Virus record (IMG/VR): IMGVR_UViG_3300046660_000488
Span: 372,001 to 436,000 of that record
Reading direction: 5' to 3' (one strand)
DNA: 64,000 bases
The notes under the pieces were generated by a model that was not told the origin of the DNA, searched no databases, and was given only the letters and a program-made list of their open reading frames with translations. Both the position numbers and the translations under genes were made by a program. Positions 3,132 through 60,858 of this stretch are shown here, piece by piece (within the stretch, counting starts at the first letter, position 1; each line of letters begins with the position of its first letter).

Positions 3132-3412
3132 TAGAAAATATCATTTGAGTTGGAAATCGCCGCAAAACGGCGCTCAGCTTCGTCGTCGCTGAGTTTGATG
3201 AACATGCAGAAGCGCTTCCACTCGGAAGCCAAGGTCGGATTGTCCGCGATGAGCTTCTGTAGCTCTTCCCAGTACTTCGCCTTTGTCTCGGCTAATTTGA
3301 TGCGATCCTGAAGACCGTCGATAATTTTCCCAAGTCTACTAACATCATCGTTCAATTTTGTAATGCAAGCAGCTTGTGCTTCGATCATACGCTGATCTGC
3401 GGTCCGATACAT
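3131..3412 (-). CDS. coiled-coil hypothetical protein
   Basis: Coupled to the next ORF; GAGGTG RBS. Confidence 0.65.
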   Translation of the reverse strand: MYRTADQRMIEAQAACITKLNDDVSRLGKIIDGLQDRIKLAETKAKYWEELQKLIADNPTLASEWKRFCMFIKLSDDEAERRFAAISNSNDIF

Positions 3413-4901: not shown

Positions 4902-5156
4902 TTAGGCTTCCGGCGTTTCGTCGCCCGCAACCGTAGTTGCGGCTTCAGCGGCTTGCTGCGCTTCAACGTATTCGATGAAGTCGAGAAGACGGCGACGGTG
5001 ACGCTGGACTTGCTCGATGTTCGACCAACCCTTCAGTGCACCTTCCCCCACAAGATGATCAATGATCTGTAGGGAGTGCTTCATGTCCTGAAGCTCCAGC
5101 GAGGGAGCGACTTCTTCAGAATCGTCGAGGTGGTCGGTTTGAGCAATATCGGTCAT
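4902..5156 (-). CDS. hypothetical protein
   Basis: ORF downstream of the late motif at 5253-5258. Confidence 0.7.
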   Translation of the reverse strand: MTDIAQTDHLDDSEEVAPSLELQDMKHSLQIIDHLVGEGALKGWSNIEQVQRHRRRLLDFIEYVEAQQAAEAATTVAGDETPEA

Positions 5157-44400: not shown

Positions 44401-44695
44401 AGGGGGAGCTTTCTGTTGACAGGCAAGCCCCGAAGGACCGGCTCCCTAACCCCGGAACCATCACCGCTTACGCGGCGACAGCGTAGTCCATGGCAACGTT
44501 GTCGTTGGCATTTACAATTGTGAACTGATCGTCGGCCGTGTCTTGCCGGATATCTCGCAAACCCTTTACCGCCGCGAATCGATGCTGGTCACCCCCACTT
44601 AGAAACCCATCGCGGACGATGGGCTTGTATGGTGGAGGTGCGGGGAATCGCACCCCGGTCTTCATCGGCTTATTACAGTCTGGTCATCAATATCG
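44401..44695 (-). ncRNA. ssrA: circularly permuted (two-piece) tmRNA with tag ANDNVAMDYAVAA
   Basis: Acceptor piece ends CCGGGG-TGCGATT-CCCCG-CACCTCCACCA at 44630; 33-nt intervening hairpin; coding piece starts GGGGGTGA at 44596; G3.U70 pair; tag stop at 44468. Confidence 0.93.
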
Positions 44696-44730
44696 TCTGT
44701 ATTTAAGCATGGTTTACCAAATGGCACAAG

Positions 44731-45192
44731 CTAAATCGAATTCTCGTCCATTTTGGTGATCCGCTTGGCGGCCAAGGACTTTTTGCGTTCCTTTTCCGAC
44801 TGGTGCGCGCGGTACACAATGCACGGACCCATCCAGCCATATGGCCCCACGAACAGTGCGGTGATCAGCCACCAGTCTTGGTTTTTAACGAACCACGGGA
44901 TGTGGTGCGTGACCGTCAGCATGCCCAGCGTACCGAAGAACACGAGCAGCAGAAAAGTCGGGCCGAACGTGATGATCTCAGACCTGATCCACCGGCGCCG
45001 AGCATCTTGTTCGTCCGGGGTCACCAGCAGACCAAGCTCGTCTTCCAGCATGGCCTGTCGTTCGGCCATCGCGCAGACCTTCTTGAACCAGTGGCGGTCG
45101 TTGATGCCAATGGGGCACGGTCCGGTCTCCGGCGTCCACGAGACGAAATCGGCGACGATCTTCTGAGCCCGGTCGGCCACCACGGGTTTCAT
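44731..45192 (-). CDS. membrane protein
   Basis: Two hydrophobic segments; ATGA overlap with serS. Confidence 0.65.
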   Translation of the reverse strand: MKPVVADRAQKIVADFVSWTPETGPCPIGINDRHWFKKVCAMAERQAMLEDELGLLVTPDEQDARRRWIRSEIITFGPTFLLLVFFGTLGMLTVTHHIPWFVKNQDWWLITALFVGPYGWMGPCIVYRAHQSEKERKKSLAAKRITKMDENSI

Positions 45193-46466
45193 CGGATGAC
45201 TTCCAACCCGTTCATGTAGGGTTGCAGGACGCGGGGCACGCGGATCGAGCCATCCTCGTTCTGGTAATTCTCCATGACGGCGACCAGCGTGCGGCCGACC
45301 GCCAACCCCGAACCGTTGAAGGTCCGCAGGTAACGGTTCTTGCCACCGTCGCTGGGCTTGTAGCGGGCGTTCATCCGCCGGGATTGGAATTGCCCGAAGT
45401 CCGACACGCTCGAAATTTCGCGGTAGGTCTCTTGGCTCGGAATCCAAACCTCGATGTCGATGGTCTTGGCGGCCGAGAAGCCGGTGTCGCCGCCGCACAG
45501 CAGTACCGTGCGGAACGAAAGCTCCAGAGCGCCCAAGATGCCTTGGGCGTTGATCAGGATGAAGTTGTGCTCGTTCGCCGTTGCGCTGTCAGTTATCGAG
45601 ACCAACTCGACCTTGTAGAATTGGTGCTGGCGAATCAGGCCGCGCGTGTCACGTCCGGCCGAACCCGCCTCGGCGCGGAAGCATGGCGTCAGAGCCACGT
45701 AGCGCAGGGGAAGCTGATCCTCGGGGATGATCTTGTCGCGGACAAGGTTGGTGATCGAAACCTCGGCGGTCGGGATCAGCCAGTGATCCGACTCCGGAAT
45801 GTGGAACAGGTCGTCCTTGAATTTTGGAAGCTGGCCGGTCCCGATCAGAGCGTTGGCGTGGACCATCAGCGGAGGATTGACCTCCATGAAGCCGTTCATG
45901 GCGTGGCGGTCGAGCATGAATTGGCCAAGCGCCCGTTCGAGACGCGCCAGCGGACCCTTGGTCACGCAGAACCGGGCGCCGCTCATTTCAGCCGCCGCCT
46001 CGAAATCCATCATGCCGAGATTTTCACCCAGCGTGACGTGGTCCTTGGGTGTGAACGAGAAATTCGGGCGAAGTAATGGGAAGTCAGAGATCACCTTGTT
46101 GTGGCTCTCGTCCACGCCGATGGGCACACCAACGTCCAGCATGTTCGGGATACGCAGCAAGGTTTCTTGAACTTGCTCGTGCAGCTTGCGCTCGTTGGCC
46201 GTGGAATCCGAGAGGAAGCCCTTCAGCGCGGTCATCGACTCAATCGCCCGCTGGCGCTCGATGCCTTGAAGCGTTGGGATGCGGGCAGATTCCTCGTTGC
46301 GCTGCTGAAGCAGGCTTTCGGAATTTTGAATGGCCTTGCGGTGCTGCTGGTCCAGATCGACCAGCGTGTTGATCAGTACCGAAGCTTCGGCGTGGGTCAT
46401 CCCCTTCCGGCCAAGCTCGCTGATGACAGCATGCGGGTTGTCGCGGACGAATTTCAGATCAAGCAT
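45189..46466 (-). CDS. serS: seryl-tRNA synthetase
   Basis: N-terminal coiled coil, LIPTAEV, FRAEAGSAGRDTRGLIRQHQF, EISS, NGSGLAVGR. Confidence 0.97.
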   Translation of the reverse strand: MLDLKFVRDNPHAVISELGRKGMTHAEASVLINTLVDLDQQHRKAIQNSESLLQQRNEESARIPTLQGIERQRAIESMTALKGFLSDSTANERKLHEQVQETLLRIPNMLDVGVPIGVDESHNKVISDFPLLRPNFSFTPKDHVTLGENLGMMDFEAAAEMSGARFCVTKGPLARLERALGQFMLDRHAMNGFMEVNPPLMVHANALIGTGQLPKFKDDLFHIPESDHWLIPTAEVSITNLVRDKIIPEDQLPLRYVALTPCFRAEAGSAGRDTRGLIRQHQFYKVELVSITDSATANEHNFILINAQGILGALELSFRTVLLCGGDTGFSAAKTIDIEVWIPSQETYREISSVSDFGQFQSRRMNARYKPSDGGKNRYLRTFNGSGLAVGRTLVAVMENYQNEDGSIRVPRVLQPYMNGLEVIR

Positions 46467-46527
46467 ATGGCCGGGCCTTTTTACGAGGCCCGACCATAGG
46501 GATGTGACTAATTTTCGTCAACCAGAA

Positions 46528-46636
46528 TTGCTGGACATTTGCCGGACATCGCCGGACATGGATCAGCTAGTTAAGTCATTGATTTTTATGAGGGTGGCTC
46601 TGGCATCCGAACATTTGCTGGACATTTGCTGGACAT
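46528..46636. repeat. two triplets of 11-bp TTGCYGGACAT repeats around an IHF-consensus site
   Basis: Repeats at 46528, 46539, 46550 and about 46604, 46615, 46626; AATCAATGACTTA on the minus strand at 46572-46584. Confidence 0.7.
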
Positions 46637-46845
46637 CAACCCAGCAAGTGCTCGATGACGCTACCAAAGACCCCGGAGTCGGGATCAGAATTATGTGGTG
46701 GATGCGCGTTTCTCGCCTTGACCTCTTCCACTTCATCTGGAGAGACAAGGACCATCCGGCCGGGGTATTTGAGCCACGTGTGGCCGTCAGCAACCCATAG
46801 GGTCTCAGAAACCCAAACCATGCCGTCTTCGTCGGGTTCCATCAT
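46636..46845 (-). CDS. hypothetical protein
   Basis: Overlaps the stop of the MazG gene. Confidence 0.5.
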   Translation of the reverse strand: MMEPDEDGMVWVSETLWVADGHTWLKYPGRMVLVSPDEVEEVKARNAHPPHNSDPDSGVFGSVIEHLLG

Positions 46846-47795
46846 TTCAGGCCGACCAGCCAAGCGGCATCGTGCGAAATCCGGGTGTCGAAGATCGAGA
46901 ATTCCGTGATGGTCTTGGGGACCTCGAAGCCGATGCCACGCAGTTGGGTCGCGATGTTCTCACAGCTTCCCTTGAACCTTTCGTACGTGCCGTCGTATTT
47001 CCGGTAGGTGACCATCATGACGTAGGTGTCGTCGCTGATTTTCTTGAAGGCATTCCGTGAGACGTGGGCGTCGAGATCGTAGGCGGCGGCGCGAAGGCCT
47101 TCGATCCGGTCGTCGCTGACCACCACGTTGAAGTGGGCCTCAAAATAGCACGCCGGGGGCATCGCCTGACGACTGTGGCTATTGGACGGAGCCGCCGGAT
47201 GCCACGGAACAGTCTCGATTTTCTGGCGGGCCACGTTATAGCCGCGTTCGACCAGATCATCCTTGATCCGGCTCACTTCAAGGAACGCCGAGCGGTTGTC
47301 GCCCATGTGGACCGACGAGGTCTGGGCGTCGAGCATAACGGTCTCGCCATGTTGGTTGTGCAGGTCGATCAGCAGCGGCTTGACGCCGATCTCCGCGCAG
47401 TCGGCCTTGTACTGCTCGATGTTCAGGCCACCCTCGCCCGGCGAGACGGTGACGTGGATTTCGTAGGGGAGCGGGTAGGTGACGTCGCGCTCGCGGGTCT
47501 GAAGTTCGTCCCAGTACTGGGCCTTCTTCATCATCATCGACCCGATGTCGTCGTGGCTGTAGCCCAACTGGTAGGCGACACTCAGCGCGCAGAGGATGAC
47601 GTCGGCCGTCTCTTCAAGGATGCGCTCGGAGGTGACGAACCGGTGGGTCGTGGTCGGCACGTTGTCGAAGGGCAGGACGGCCTTGGCCAGTTCGCCGACT
47701 TCTTCAGCCGTCTTCAGGGCCTTTTCGGTCAGGGTCTTCTTATCCTTGGCGGACAGCGCGGCGATATAGTCGAAAATCTCGGGTTTCATGACCAC
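46842..47795 (-). CDS. MazG pyrophosphohydrolase fused to a C-terminal domain
   Basis: KTAEEVGELA...EETADV; C-terminal YEIHVTV, RQKIETVPWHP, YFEAH. Confidence 0.8.
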   Translation of the reverse strand: MVMKPEIFDYIAALSAKDKKTLTEKALKTAEEVGELAKAVLPFDNVPTTTHRFVTSERILEETADVILCALSVAYQLGYSHDDIGSMMMKKAQYWDELQTRERDVTYPLPYEIHVTVSPGEGGLNIEQYKADCAEIGVKPLLIDLHNQHGETVMLDAQTSSVHMGDNRSAFLEVSRIKDDLVERGYNVARQKIETVPWHPAAPSNSHSRQAMPPACYFEAHFNVVVSDDRIEGLRAAAYDLDAHVSRNAFKKISDDTYVMMVTYRKYDGTYERFKGSCENIATQLRGIGFEVPKTITEFSIFDTRISHDAAWLVGLK

Positions 47796-48834: not shown

Positions 48835-49647
48835 TCAGCGCATCTTCTTCAGGCCGGAGACATAGTTGCCGTTGGTCACGGCGGTGAGGACTTGCTTGCG
48901 GTTACCGGTGCGGTTGAAGCTACCGTGCAGCCACGGGCGGTTGCCCAAGTACTCAAGGATGAATTGATCGTAGCAGACGTTGTCCTTGATCCATTTCGCA
49001 CGGACCCAGTACTCATCGTCGCTGATGTTCAGGAACTGCACGTCGGCGGCCATGCCGCGCTCATGCTGGCTCTTCGACGAACCGGCCCGGAAGCCAGACG
49101 TGATGATCATGTTCCGGCGGCCGTATCGGGCGGCCAGAGGTTCGAGGTAATTCGTGCACATCCCTTTGAGGTTGCACACGATCTGAGCCACGGTCAGGCC
49201 ATGCTGGGCGACGACGCCTTGACGGCTGATGGCCGTGCCGACCGTCACGTCTGACAGCTTGAAATTCGGGGATAGCTGCAAGCTGTATGGGACCGTGCCG
49301 CGAATGTTCGCGCAGTCGGCTGGTAGCGGACCCGTGTTGTTCGTCACGAGGTCGTCGGTGGCCAGCGGCGATCCGGCCGATCCCGTCAGCGAGTTCGAGC
49401 GGGCGCGCTCCATCGCGGTGGGCGAACGGCCATAGACCGGGGGATAGACGGCCAGCCCGTCATCCGACTCGGGATCATCATCCTCGGAGCCGAGATCACG
49501 TTCGTCATAGATGACGACCTGACCGTTGATCGAATAGCTGATCGAAGGCGATCCCGTCGCCGGGTCGGTGAACATGCTGCTCGCGCCGGTGACGATCTTG
49601 TCGCCCTTCGCGGTCAGACTTCCAACTCTGGCAACGGGAAAAGCCAT
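48835..49647 (-). CDS. PAAR-like N-terminus fused to peptidase M15
   Basis: PVARVGS...IVTGASSMF; LSPNF.L, ITSGFR, SQHERGMAAD, WLH.S. Confidence 0.8.
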   Translation of the reverse strand: MAFPVARVGSLTAKGDKIVTGASSMFTDPATGSPSISYSINGQVVIYDERDLGSEDDDPESDDGLAVYPPVYGRSPTAMERARSNSLTGSAGSPLATDDLVTNNTGPLPADCANIRGTVPYSLQLSPNFKLSDVTVGTAISRQGVVAQHGLTVAQIVCNLKGMCTNYLEPLAARYGRRNMIITSGFRAGSSKSQHERGMAADVQFLNISDDEYWVRAKWIKDNVCYDQFILEYLGNRPWLHGSFNRTGNRKQVLTAVTNGNYVSGLKKMR

Positions 49648-59661: not shown

Positions 59662-60858
59662 TTGGTCGCGCACGAGAATAGCTGGTTTCTCGACTGCTCC
59701 CTGATCCTCGGGGACATCGGCCCCGACACCTACTACTATTACCAGAACGTCGATCCATACACGGATGACGTGATCGGCAACTATCGCAGCCCGCCGGGCA
59801 TGGTGTTCGACACCCACGGCGATAGCCTGTCGTATCAGGCGCTCATGATGGAAGCCCGGTTCACCGAGTGGCGCGCGGCCTTCCCCAAGGCCGCGTTGGG
59901 TGTCTCCGTGTCCAGTGTCGAGACCTTCGGCCATGTCCTACAAAATCACGTCAGTGAATTGGCGATTGGCGCCGTGAACCACGGCCACCGGCGCGTCACA
60001 GCGGAGGTGCGAGAGGCCAAGCACTTCAACCAGACCACGAAGGTCATGCGGCGGGCGATGAACAGGATCGCGGCCGACCTTCAGGGCCTCGACCGTGACA
60101 CCTTGCTTCGCATCGACGCCGAGCACACGGCCTACCTGCAATCGCGCCTGTACGAGCGCCCGCAGGACGTCGAGGGCATCCCGTTTTATCAGCGAGACCT
60201 GCGGCCGATCAAGAACGCCAAGGCCTTCATTCGCCGCGAGCAGAAGCATGCGCGCAGCATCATGAAGCGCAGCATGAAATTCCTCAGCGCCCTGATCGGC
60301 GACGACGCCACGCGGATGTTCGTGAGCGGCGACCGAATCAGGATTGAGGGCCAGCATTGCGTCTACGAAATCCATCGCACCGGCCGCATGGCCTATGAGC
60401 ACGGCGGCTCCGGCCTGAAGGTGTTCACCAAGGACGAAGACATCCACCTGTGCGACATCTGCATCTACACGCCGAACGTCCCGATCTTCGATCACGTCGC
60501 TGGGATCGTCATGCACATCAAGGCTGGTGAGGAAGACAAGATTCTGGAGATCGGCAACCCCTATAATCTCAGCGAGGCCGCCAAGCAGCAGGAATGGCTC
60601 GTTCCCTACCTGCCCAAGCCTCGTGTGCCTCAGCCGCCGGTGGAACAGCCGGACCGGGATTTCATGGGCATCCGCGCGGTCCCGTACTTTGGGGACCTGC
60701 CGCAGGTCTATCGCGGCGCTGACCGCGAGCAACGTCTGAGAACCATGCGGCATCTGATCGGCCGCCACCTATATGACGACCTTGGCCTTGAGCGCTTCGC
60801 GCTGGCCGGTCGTGTTGTGAAAGAACAAAGGGCGTTGGAACGTGTACGAGTGGCTTGA
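59662..60858 (+). CDS. hypothetical protein (start uncertain)
   Basis: Long ORF with LCDICIY..PIFDHVA...EE motif. Confidence 0.7.
   Translation: MVAHENSWFLDCSLILGDIGPDTYYYYQNVDPYTDDVIGNYRSPPGMVFDTHGDSLSYQALMMEARFTEWRAAFPKAALGVSVSSVETFGHVLQNHVSELAIGAVNHGHRRVTAEVREAKHFNQTTKVMRRAMNRIAADLQGLDRDTLLRIDAEHTAYLQSRLYERPQDVEGIPFYQRDLRPIKNAKAFIRREQKHARSIMKRSMKFLSALIGDDATRMFVSGDRIRIEGQHCVYEIHRTGRMAYEHGGSGLKVFTKDEDIHLCDICIYTPNVPIFDHVAGIVMHIKAGEEDKILEIGNPYNLSEAAKQQEWLVPYLPKPRVPQPPVEQPDRDFMGIRAVPYFGDLPQVYRGADREQRLRTMRHLIGRHLYDDLGLERFALAGRVVKEQRALERVRVA

What the first reader, a model, noticed from the sequence alone, without database searches (positions are those of the whole stretch)
46528..46636. IHF-consensus site flanked by two triplets of 11-bp direct repeats upstream of serS
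Seen in sequence: TTGCTGGACAT-TTGCCGGACAT-CGCCGGACAT, then TAAGTCATTGATT (WATCAANNNNTTR on the - strand), then CCGAACAT-TTGCTGGACAT-TTGCTGGACAT. The 11-bp period places the sites on one helix face. Established: tandem arm sites plus IHF typify tyrosine-integrase att arms and iteron origins. Inference: a bent nucleoprotein site that could be a recombination scar from serS capture, a resolution site, an origin or a looped operator. No recombinase gene lies in the window.
Basis: partly seen in the sequence, partly recalled or inferred. Interest (0 to 1): 0.6.

Follow-up and report, generated by a model that had tools for sequence, protein, structure and literature searches.

The report
Conserved phased-repeat module in giant phages
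Two sets of three 11-bp repeats around a bendable AT-rich spacer, just upstream of a 578-kb phage's seryl-tRNA synthetase gene, are a single-copy protein-docking module also found, unannotated, in cultured Caulobacter phages; its binding protein and its job (gene switch or replication start) are still unknown.

Summary
Six CYGGACAT-type repeats (3 + 3, period 10-11 bp) lie at 46528-46636, with the two sets 55 bp apart and so in helical phase. They flank a 49-bp AT-rich spacer that holds an exact IHF consensus. This is the only such cluster in the 578,292-bp phage genome. The module sits in the 169-bp gap between a 69-aa ORF and phage serS. Its serS-side set ends 6 bp from a TTGACG-17-TATGGT promoter-like site. 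It is not a scar of serS capture: relatives keep the same gene order without it. It is unlikely to be an att site, because the genome has no tyrosine or serine recombinase. The new result is that the same module occurs once per genome in a related 415-kb phage, in Caulobacter phages (CcrRogue and CcrBL10 group, CcrBL9 group), in a Lacusarx-like phage and in a 279-kb relative. The gene neighbourhood differs each time. The distance between the two sets changes only in about 11-bp steps. phiCbK and Colossus lack it. Best reading: a cooperative, wrapped protein-DNA complex that here controls the serS promoter (about 0.4). Main rival: an iteron-type replication origin (about 0.27). The binding protein was not identified.

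The parts
46528..46559 (+). Repeat set nearest serS: three direct repeats (11, 11 and 10 bp) with cores CTGGACAT, CCGGACAT, CCGGACAT. Read in the direction of serS transcription they are ATGTCC-type repeats at about -42 to -73 of the promoter-like site.
   Evidence: the 21-mer at 46530-46550 is identical to the invariant right-hand set of the Bertelyvirus phages
46560..46606 (.). AT-rich spacer with a T5 tract and the near-palindrome TCATTGA. It keeps the two sets 55 bp (five helical turns) apart.
   Evidence: spacers of homologues share ATCAA or TCAWTGA and A/T tracts
46572..46584 (-). Exact IHF consensus match (WATCAANNNNTTR) near the centre of the spacer
   Evidence: 2 matches in the window, 0.54 expected; not exactly conserved in homologues
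46607..46636 (+). Repeat set far from serS: degenerate CCGAACAT followed by two perfect TTGCTGGACAT units. The last unit overlaps the stop codon of the 69-aa ORF.
46493..46521 (-). Sigma-70-like promoter candidate TTGACG-17-TATGGT. Its -35 hexamer lies 6 bp from the nearer repeat set and it points into serS.
   Evidence: a consensus scan only; TTGAC lies within 40 bp of one set in 5 of 8 homologous modules, against 0.04 per flank by chance
46466..46498 (-). 13-bp-stem hairpin that spans the -10 hexamer and ends at the serS start codon. Whether it belongs to the module is uncertain.
   Evidence: -25 kcal/mol, z -4.8
45189..46466 (-). Phage seryl-tRNA synthetase gene, the first gene downstream of the module
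   Evidence: tRNA-synt_2b and Seryl_tRNA_N
46636..46845 (-). 69-aa acidic ORF with no family match, start overlapping the stop of the MazG-like gene (ATGA). Together with the module it fills a gap that is about 60 bp in L008 and L009.

Best explanation
The module is a docking platform for a sequence-specific DNA-binding protein that binds one protomer per CYGGACAT repeat, head to tail. Because all six repeats lie on one face of the helix and the AT-rich spacer can bend (in this phage probably with host IHF), the two sets are brought together into one wrapped or looped complex. In this window the complex covers about -42 to -160 of a sigma-70-type promoter, so its most likely output is control of serS and the genes behind it, which include the tmRNA gene 1.8 kb downstream. 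Shown: the repeats, their uniqueness, their phasing and their conservation as a single-copy module in a lineage of large phages of Alphaproteobacteria. Inferred: that a protein binds, that IHF bends the spacer, that the promoter is real, and that the output is transcriptional. The binder is unknown. It could be a host winged-helix response regulator, as for the CtrA boxes these phage lineages already exploit, or a small phage-encoded protein.
For: The module is unique and non-random. Its geometry is conserved: own 11,10|55|11,11; G001 10,10,11|65|10,11; CcrRogue 10,11|54|11,10,10; J4 11,11|55|11,11,10; G003 11|65|11; CcrBL9 76; L267 54. In the alignment of four Bertelyviruses the right-hand set is invariant while the spacer varies. 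BLAST of the module against 50,697 phage records returns both sets only in Caulobacter phages, always in unannotated DNA. Each genome has one locus. A promoter-like site abuts the set nearer serS, and TTGAC lies within 40 bp of one set in own, CcrRogue, G003, Lacusarx and L267. A near-identical array lies on a TTGACA promoter of a Fic+HTH gene in an alphaproteobacterial genome. There is precedent: phiCbK-like and Lacusarx phages carry clusters of host CtrA sites, also 11-bp direct repeats, in promoter regions (PMC9437464). The module is not an RNA element: no Rfam match and fold z -1.2.
Against: In the Bertelyviruses the module lies between convergent gene ends with no gene to control. In G001 it ends 16 nt before a start codon with no visible promoter. 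The repeats point either way relative to the neighbouring promoter, which is unusual for activators that bind direct repeats. Intergenic gaps upstream of genes often hold promoters anyway, so the adjacency may be incidental. The own genome has no Trans_reg_C domain. 401 alphaproteobacterial genomes show almost no such arrays, so no host regulon is visible. One site per genome is odd for a regulator.
Confidence: 0.4

Rival explanations
1. It is an iteron-type replication origin. An initiator oligomerises on the two phased repeat sets, wraps the DNA and melts the AT-rich spacer or flank, and the neighbouring promoter may help activate it.
For: Wherever the context of similar two-part GGACAT arrays could be read in other phages, they lie inside or beside replication-initiator genes. 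Examples are O-like initiators followed by DnaB helicase (L014 group, L031, L255), a DnaD-like/O-like gene (L033), ORFs that hold the array next to DnaB (L017, L260, L268), other replication proteins (L030, L044) and a primase (L026). A pMV158-type plasmid carries three 11-bp GGACA repeats upstream of copG-repB (PMC1851628 seen). A single copy per genome and independence from position and orientation fit a replicator. In the Bertelyviruses the module sits in a 600-bp non-coding gap beside two conserved AT-rich boxes. In G003 it lies 74 bp upstream of the DNA polymerase gene. The spacer is in the top 0.1% of the genome for A+T.
Against: No O-like or DnaD-like initiator was found in the own genome, G001, G002 or G003 (one sub-threshold fragment in G003). 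No DnaA boxes occur near any module. The AT-rich stretch is only about 30 bp. phiCbK and Colossus have no module although they share host and replication genes with CcrRogue. GC skew gives no origin signal in own, CcrRogue or J4. No replication gene lies near the module in this window.
Confidence: 0.27
2. It is a DNA-handling signal of another kind: a packaging recognition site (as in P1 pac or lambda cosB, where repeats flank an IHF site), or a stop or anchor signal for stepwise genome entry like the T5 injection stop region.
For: Repeats flanking an IHF-type bend are the layout of cosB and P1 pac (own knowledge). In CcrSC, J4 and BL47 the module lies about 250-370 bp beyond the annotated end of the long terminal repeat, inside a non-coding gap. 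That is where T5 has its repeat-rich injection stop region (bioRxiv 10.1101/866236). phiCbK-like phages and G003 encode T5 A1-like 'DNA transfer' proteins (PMC3556154).
Against: In CcrRogue the module is about 15 kb beyond the 10.3-kb terminal repeat, and the mapped termini of phiCbK-like phages lie elsewhere. phiCbK lacks the module. No terminase gene is nearby in the window. The record's 127-bp end overlap is an assembly overlap and says nothing about the real DNA ends.
Confidence: 0.08
3. It is a site-specific recombination site: the repeats act as accessory 'arm' sites and a crossover core lies in the spacer.
For: Phased direct repeats plus IHF are typical of lambda-type arms (own knowledge). 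In Lacusarx two small arrays flank a weak tRNA-like segment directly downstream of a 458-aa tyrosine recombinase gene. All cultured carriers encode a small tyrosine recombinase.
Against: The own genome and G001 have no PF00589 or PF00239 match. phiCbK has the recombinase but no module. Except in Lacusarx, the recombinase genes lie 12-130 kb from the module. The 49-bp spacer shows no clear inverted core sites. serS synteny predates the module.
Confidence: 0.05
4. It is a small selfish or decaying cassette that lands in intergenic gaps and has no function for the phage.
For: It occupies a different gap in every lineage. Its place is taken by an unrelated ORF in phiCbK (gp055) and in L007, or by nothing in L008, L009 and at own 111.8 kb.
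Against: There is always exactly one copy. The repeat cores and the phasing are conserved across lineages whose proteins are only 25-60% identical. The right-hand set is invariant among four Bertelyviruses.
Confidence: 0.05

Closest known systems
Clusters of host CtrA boxes (TTAA-N7-TTAA) in phiCbK-like, Lacusarx and other phages of Alphaproteobacteria (PMC9437464), and OmpR/PhoB-family operators in general (OmpR F1-F4 with IHF, TorR boxes; own knowledge)
   Same: Direct repeats with a 10-11-bp period; located upstream of a -35 element; the same phage lineages; gained and lost between close relatives.
   Different: The motif is CYGGACAT, not a CtrA box. There is one locus per genome rather than many. 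The strict two-part phased geometry, the variable orientation and the occurrence in a convergent gap all differ. No response-regulator DNA-binding domain is encoded by the phage.
Iteron origins inside O-like initiator genes of lambdoid phages (lambda ori paradigm)
   Same: Two blocks of GGACA(T/C) repeats with an 11-bp period, with the blocks 33-55 bp apart and in phase, next to AT-rich DNA (L014, L031, L255, L260).
   Different: Here the module is intergenic, no O-like, DnaD-like or DnaB-type gene lies beside it, and no such initiator was found in the genome.
parC centromere of plasmid R1, bound by ParR (two sets of five 11-bp iterons around a promoter; own knowledge)
   Same: 11-bp iterons in two in-phase sets that would be bound as one continuous wrapped complex and that also regulate a promoter.
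   Different: The promoter-like site lies outside the two sets, not between them. The downstream gene is serS, not parM or parR.
bind locus of the pMV158 double-strand origin (three 11-bp direct repeats for RepB; PMC1851628)
   Same: Three 11-bp direct repeats at a distance from a hairpin. A pMV158-type plasmid with GGACA repeats was found (L170).
   Different: No Rep gene was seen next to the module, there is a second repeat set, and the genome is 578 kb.
P1 pac, lambda cosB, and the T5 injection stop region
   Same: Short repeats on both sides of an IHF-type bend; a non-coding position just beyond a long terminal repeat in the Bertelyviruses.
   Different: Not near a terminase gene, not at the mapped termini of phiCbK-like phages, and absent from phiCbK.

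Membership tests
Tyrosine-integrase att site (arm-type sites, IHF, core) | A tyrosine recombinase encoded by the element | tested here: not met
   PF00589 gives no match in the 578-kb genome or in G001, while all 14 control genomes match. No serine recombinase either.
Tyrosine-integrase att site (arm-type sites, IHF, core) | A core with inverted recombinase sites between the arms, usually sharing identity with a host tRNA or tmRNA end | tested here: inconclusive
   The 49-bp spacer holds only a 7-bp near-palindrome and the intergenic region has no tRNA-like segment. Lacusarx does have a weak tRNA-like segment between its two arrays.
IHF-bent nucleoprotein site | A match to WATCAANNNNTTR placed between the protein-binding sites | tested here: met
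   46572-46584 on the - strand, one of 2 matches in 64 kb. The exact consensus is absent from all seven homologous modules. Binding itself cannot be tested here.
Iteron-type replication origin | Three or more tandem direct repeats in helical phase | tested here: met
Iteron-type replication origin | A cognate initiator gene (Rep, O or DnaD-like), usually adjacent | tested here: not met
   Neighbours are a MazG-like gene, a 69-aa ORF and serS. phrog_2514 and phrog_345 are absent from the genome, and phmmer with ten initiators found none. Only these families were tried.
Iteron-type replication origin | An adjacent AT-rich unwinding element and host DnaA boxes | tested here: inconclusive
   There is a 30-bp stretch of 73% A+T, in the top 0.1% of the genome, but it is short. 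No DnaA box lies within 300 bp.
Iteron-type replication origin | Replication starts there | not testable with these tools
OmpR/PhoB-type response-regulator operator | Direct repeats with a 10-11-bp period upstream of or overlapping a -35 element | tested here: met
   The nearer set ends 6 bp from TTGACG. The same holds for 5 of 8 modules but not for G001 or the Bertelyviruses.
OmpR/PhoB-type response-regulator operator | A match to a known regulator motif, or a regulon of such sites in host genomes | tested here: not met
   No CtrA box is present. In 401 alphaproteobacterial genomes there were 12 repeat pairs, about the number expected by chance, and only one real array. No named Caulobacter genome could be searched.
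parC/ParR-type centromere | A promoter between two iteron sets, with parM and parR downstream | tested here: not met
   The only promoter-like site lies outside the sets, and the downstream gene is serS.
pac or cos packaging site | Located in or next to the small terminase gene, with DNA ends mapping there | tested here: not met
   No terminase gene is nearby. The termini of phiCbK-like phages map elsewhere (PMC3556154). The DNA ends of this phage itself cannot be tested here.

The most novel reading that the evidence does not exclude
The module is the replication origin, or another essential single-copy control point, of a whole lineage of large and giant phages of Alphaproteobacteria. It would be bound by an initiator of a family not yet recognised, and it moves between intergenic gaps as a self-contained cassette. 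No origin has been defined for phiCbK-like or 'huge' phages, as far as I know.
Probability: 0.27. Interest if true: 0.65.

Novelty: new variant of a known kind. Interest (0 to 1): 0.5.

Why it matters
Cis-acting control sites of giant phages are almost unknown. This one is short, sharply defined and present once per genome. It is shared between an uncultured 578-kb phage and laboratory phages of the model bacterium Caulobacter crescentus (CcrRogue, CcrBL10, CcrBL9, CcrSC, J4). phiCbK is a natural relative without the module and can serve as a control. The uncultured phage's element can therefore be tested directly by pull-down of the binding protein, deletion, transcription-start mapping and replication mapping. 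If it is an operator, it shows how a giant phage controls its own translation genes (serS, tmRNA). If it is an origin, it would be the first for this group.

Tried and rejected
1. A scar of serS capture: rejected by synteny.
2. A general phage promoter motif: rejected, there is one locus per genome.
3. An RNA element: no Rfam match and no significant fold.
4. A sigma-54 promoter: by eye, the GG/GC spacing does not fit.
5. CtrA, DnaA, CcrM or LexA-type sites: no matches near any module. The alphaproteobacterial LexA half-site GAAC differs from GGAC in all the conserved copies.
6. GC-skew mapping of an origin: uninformative in own, CcrRogue, J4 and phiCbK.
7. Finding the binder by homology: no Trans_reg_C, ParB_N, O-like or DnaD-like match.
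8. Finding the binder by neighbourhood: flanking genes share no homology between lineages, and the neighbours in CcrBL9 and CcrRogue have no Pfam domain.
9. Finding the binder by presence pattern: genes present in CcrRogue and J4 but not phiCbK are 11 small ORFs without Pfam hits, and none is detectable in this genome. A first attempt gave only antisense artefacts.
10. One protein family next to all GGACAT arrays: none exists. The contexts include initiator genes, AlbA_2-HATPase_c_4-HTH genes, a Fic-HTH gene and a tail-gene region, so the shared hexamer does not prove a shared binder.
11. A link to tRNA-Ser, tmRNA or serS: seen in own, G001, L267 and Lacusarx but not in CcrRogue, J4 or G003, so it is left as an observation.
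13. Literature search for the motif returned only primer noise.
About 70 hits are expected by chance, so only arrays with four or more copies were interpreted.

Full report
**Where the window lies.** The window is bases 372001-436000 of a 578,292-bp virus record. The record's 127-bp end overlap has the size of an assembly overlap, so the real DNA ends are unknown. G+C content is 59%. The window carries a phage seryl-tRNA synthetase gene (45189-46466, - strand) and an alphaproteobacterial-type permuted tmRNA gene (44402-44738, - strand). Dozens of ORFs have relatives in phiCbK-like Caulobacter phages. The host is therefore most likely an alphaproteobacterium.

**The observation.**
- Six 8-mers of the type CYGGACAT start at 46531, 46542, 46552, 46607, 46618 and 46629. 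The fourth is the degenerate CCGAACAT. The spacings are 11, 10, 55, 11, 11.
- All six therefore fall on one face of the helix, with 98 bp spanning nine repeat steps.
- The motif is strongly over-represented. The cluster is the only one in the whole genome.
- The spacer holds one of only two exact IHF-consensus matches in the 64-kb window. It also holds a 30-bp stretch of 73% A+T, in the top 0.1% of genome windows.

**Local anatomy.** The module fills most of a 169-bp gap between a 69-aa acidic ORF (46845-46636, - strand) and serS. The ORF's start overlaps the stop of the MazG-like gene, and its own stop overlaps the last repeat.
- Read along the - strand, the set nearer serS ends 6 bp before TTGACG-17-TATGGT. 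This is the only promoter-like site in the region.
- That places the three nearer repeats at about -42 to -73, the IHF match near -90 and the farther set at about -130 to -160.
- A very stable hairpin (-25 kcal/mol, z -4.8) spans the -10 hexamer and ends at the serS AUG.
- The module has no RNA-family match and no significant fold.

**Not a scar of serS capture and not an att site.** Three relatives (proteins 50-68% identical) keep the MazG-like gene, serS and the 604-aa gene in the same order. L007 has a different ORF in the gap. L008 and L009 have only about 60 bp there, and none has repeats. The genome has no tyrosine or serine recombinase.

**The same module in other phages.** A pattern scan and a BLAST search found the module elsewhere. 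It has the same CYGGACAT or CCGGCCA units, 3-5 plus 2-4 copies, and a spacer with an ATCAA or TCAWTGA core and A/T tracts.

| Phage | Position of the module |
|---|---|
| G001, a 415-kb relative of this phage | Between two paralogous small genes. The matching place in the own genome (111.8 kb) has a 14-bp gap and no repeats. |
| CcrRogue, CcrBL10 and four close relatives | A 232-bp gap between gp056 and gp057 |
| CcrBL9 (= G002), CcrSC, J4, BL47, C1, C2 (Bertelyvirus) | A 600-bp gap between convergent gene ends, 250-900 bp beyond the long terminal repeat |
| G003, a 164-kb Lacusarx/Erythrobacter-phage-like contig | 74 bp upstream of the DNA polymerase gene |
| L267, a 279-kb phiCbK-like contig | Between a GOLLD RNA gene and a conserved 679-aa gene |
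| Lacusarx | A looser form of the module, beside a recombinase gene |

- Each genome has one locus.
- The 21-mer at 46530-46550 is identical to the right-hand set, which is invariant in four Bertelyviruses.
- The start-to-start distance between the two sets is 54 or 55, 65 or 76 bp, that is five, six or seven turns. This is the strongest sign that both sets are read together by one complex.
- Unrelated phages with two-part GGACAT arrays show the same clustering, with distances at 44-46 and 53-57 bp.
- phiCbK and Colossus have no module. In phiCbK, gene gp055 occupies the place the module has in CcrRogue, while the promoter-like sequence next to it is retained.

**What binds it.** This was not found.
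- The genome has no response-regulator DNA-binding domain, no ParB_N domain, and no O-like or DnaD-like initiator.
- Flanking genes differ in every lineage.
- Genes shared by carrier phages but missing from phiCbK gave no candidate.
- Host genomes do not show a regulon of such arrays. In 401 alphaproteobacterial genomes the counts were near chance. The one true array sits on the promoter of a Fic+HTH gene.

**Function.** Two readings survive.
- *Operator or upstream activating site (about 0.4).* The module abuts an outward-facing TTGAC-type promoter in five of eight cases, against 0.04 per flank by chance. The layout at -42 to -160 with a central bend resembles OmpR-family control regions. These phage lineages are already known to carry clusters of host CtrA sites, which are also 11-bp direct repeats (PMC9437464). 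Against this reading: the convergent-gap position in the Bertelyviruses, the lack of a promoter in G001, the variable orientation, and one site per genome.
- *Iteron origin (about 0.27).* Wherever similar two-part arrays could be placed in other phages, they lie inside or beside initiator genes next to DnaB helicases. A single copy and independence from position fit a replicator, and the Bertelyvirus gap also has two AT-rich boxes. Against this reading: no initiator, no DnaA boxes, a short AT-rich stretch, absence from phiCbK, and no skew signal.
- *Minor rivals.* A packaging site or a T5-like injection-stop signal, a recombination site, and a functionless cassette.

**Comparison and novelty.** The element belongs to the known general kind of phased direct-repeat protein-binding arrays, which includes iterons, operators and centromeres. 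It fails at least one defining test for each specific family I considered; the membership table lists these. The strictly phased two-part module, single-copy and relocating within a lineage of large phages of Alphaproteobacteria, is not annotated in any of the GenBank records examined. Gill et al. 2012 do not mention it in the sections I read.

**Limits.** The read tools could not be used.

Noticed in passing
window 44402-44738 (-): A phage-encoded two-piece (permuted) alphaproteobacterial-type tmRNA gene lies 1.8 kb downstream of the module, on the same strand as serS (alpha_tmRNA 114 bits, tmRNA_permuted 122 bits). ARAGORN did not call it.
   Followed up: partly
window 46466-46498 (-): A 13-bp-stem hairpin (-25 kcal/mol, z -4.8) spans the predicted -10 hexamer and ends at the serS AUG. 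It would form only in read-through transcripts from upstream and could block serS translation or act as a terminator without a U-tract. It is not present in L007, L008 or L009.
   Followed up: partly
L267:4309-4776 (-), L267:5975-6358 (+): In a 279-kb phiCbK-like contig the module lies about 190 bp from a GOLLD RNA gene (164 bits) that has an embedded tRNA-Ser(UGA), and 1.9 kb from a permuted tmRNA gene. In G001, tRNA-Ser(UGA) lies 650 bp downstream of the module. Together with serS here, 'serine' turns up three times; this may be coincidence.
   Followed up: partly
L185:2820-2884 (+): In Sphingobium phage Lacusarx a weak tRNA-like segment (25 bits, below threshold) lies between two small CTGGACAC/CTGGCCAT arrays, directly downstream of a 458-aa tyrosine recombinase gene. 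This looks like an attP layout in a phage regarded as virulent.
   Followed up: partly
L073, L076, L087, L115, L118 (bacterial and archaeal genomes): Genes for roughly 460-aa AlbA_2 + HATPase_c_4 + HTH proteins from very different phyla, including Nanohaloarchaea and Methanoculleus, end in or just before tandem GGACAT arrays.
   Followed up: partly
L236 (alphaproteobacterial genome G328): An array almost identical to the phage one (CTGGACAT, CCGGACAT, CCGGACAT at an 11-bp period) overlaps a TTGACA-type promoter of a Fic-domain protein with a C-terminal HTH. This protein is a candidate type of binder.
   Followed up: partly
L180:3970-4120 (CcrBL9), alignment A2 columns 300-420: Two conserved AT-rich boxes (A/T runs of about 20 bp in a 66% G+C genome) lie left of the module in all four Bertelyviruses. 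A nearly invariant 150-bp block precedes them, in a stretch of which BLAST finds several copies in the record.
   Followed up: no
phiCbK 2000-2061, J4 3290-3352 and 2313-2398 (terminal repeats): 16-17-bp tandem repeats containing GTTAAGGTTAAC lie in the terminal repeats. They fit the CtrA-box clusters described in PMC9437464.
   Followed up: no
window 46842-47795 (-), 48835-49647 (-): The 317-aa protein upstream is MazG-like (phrog_1247). It is conserved in jumbo phages of Xanthomonas and Stenotrophomonas and in a 635-kb uncultured phage (LR745206). The 270-aa protein has an M15 peptidase or endolysin domain.
   Followed up: partly
L032:4776-4882, 4932-5041, 5048-5135 (G001): The tRNA cluster downstream of the G001 module has unusually long tRNA matches (about 107-110 nt, possibly with introns) and a tRNA with a CUA anticodon, a possible amber suppressor.
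   Followed up: no
window 60236-60275; genome 95243-95279, 122288-122311, 533706-533745: Other short tandem repeats with periods of 10-14 bp and 2.4-3 copies occur elsewhere in the genome. None is two-part, and they were not examined.
   Followed up: no
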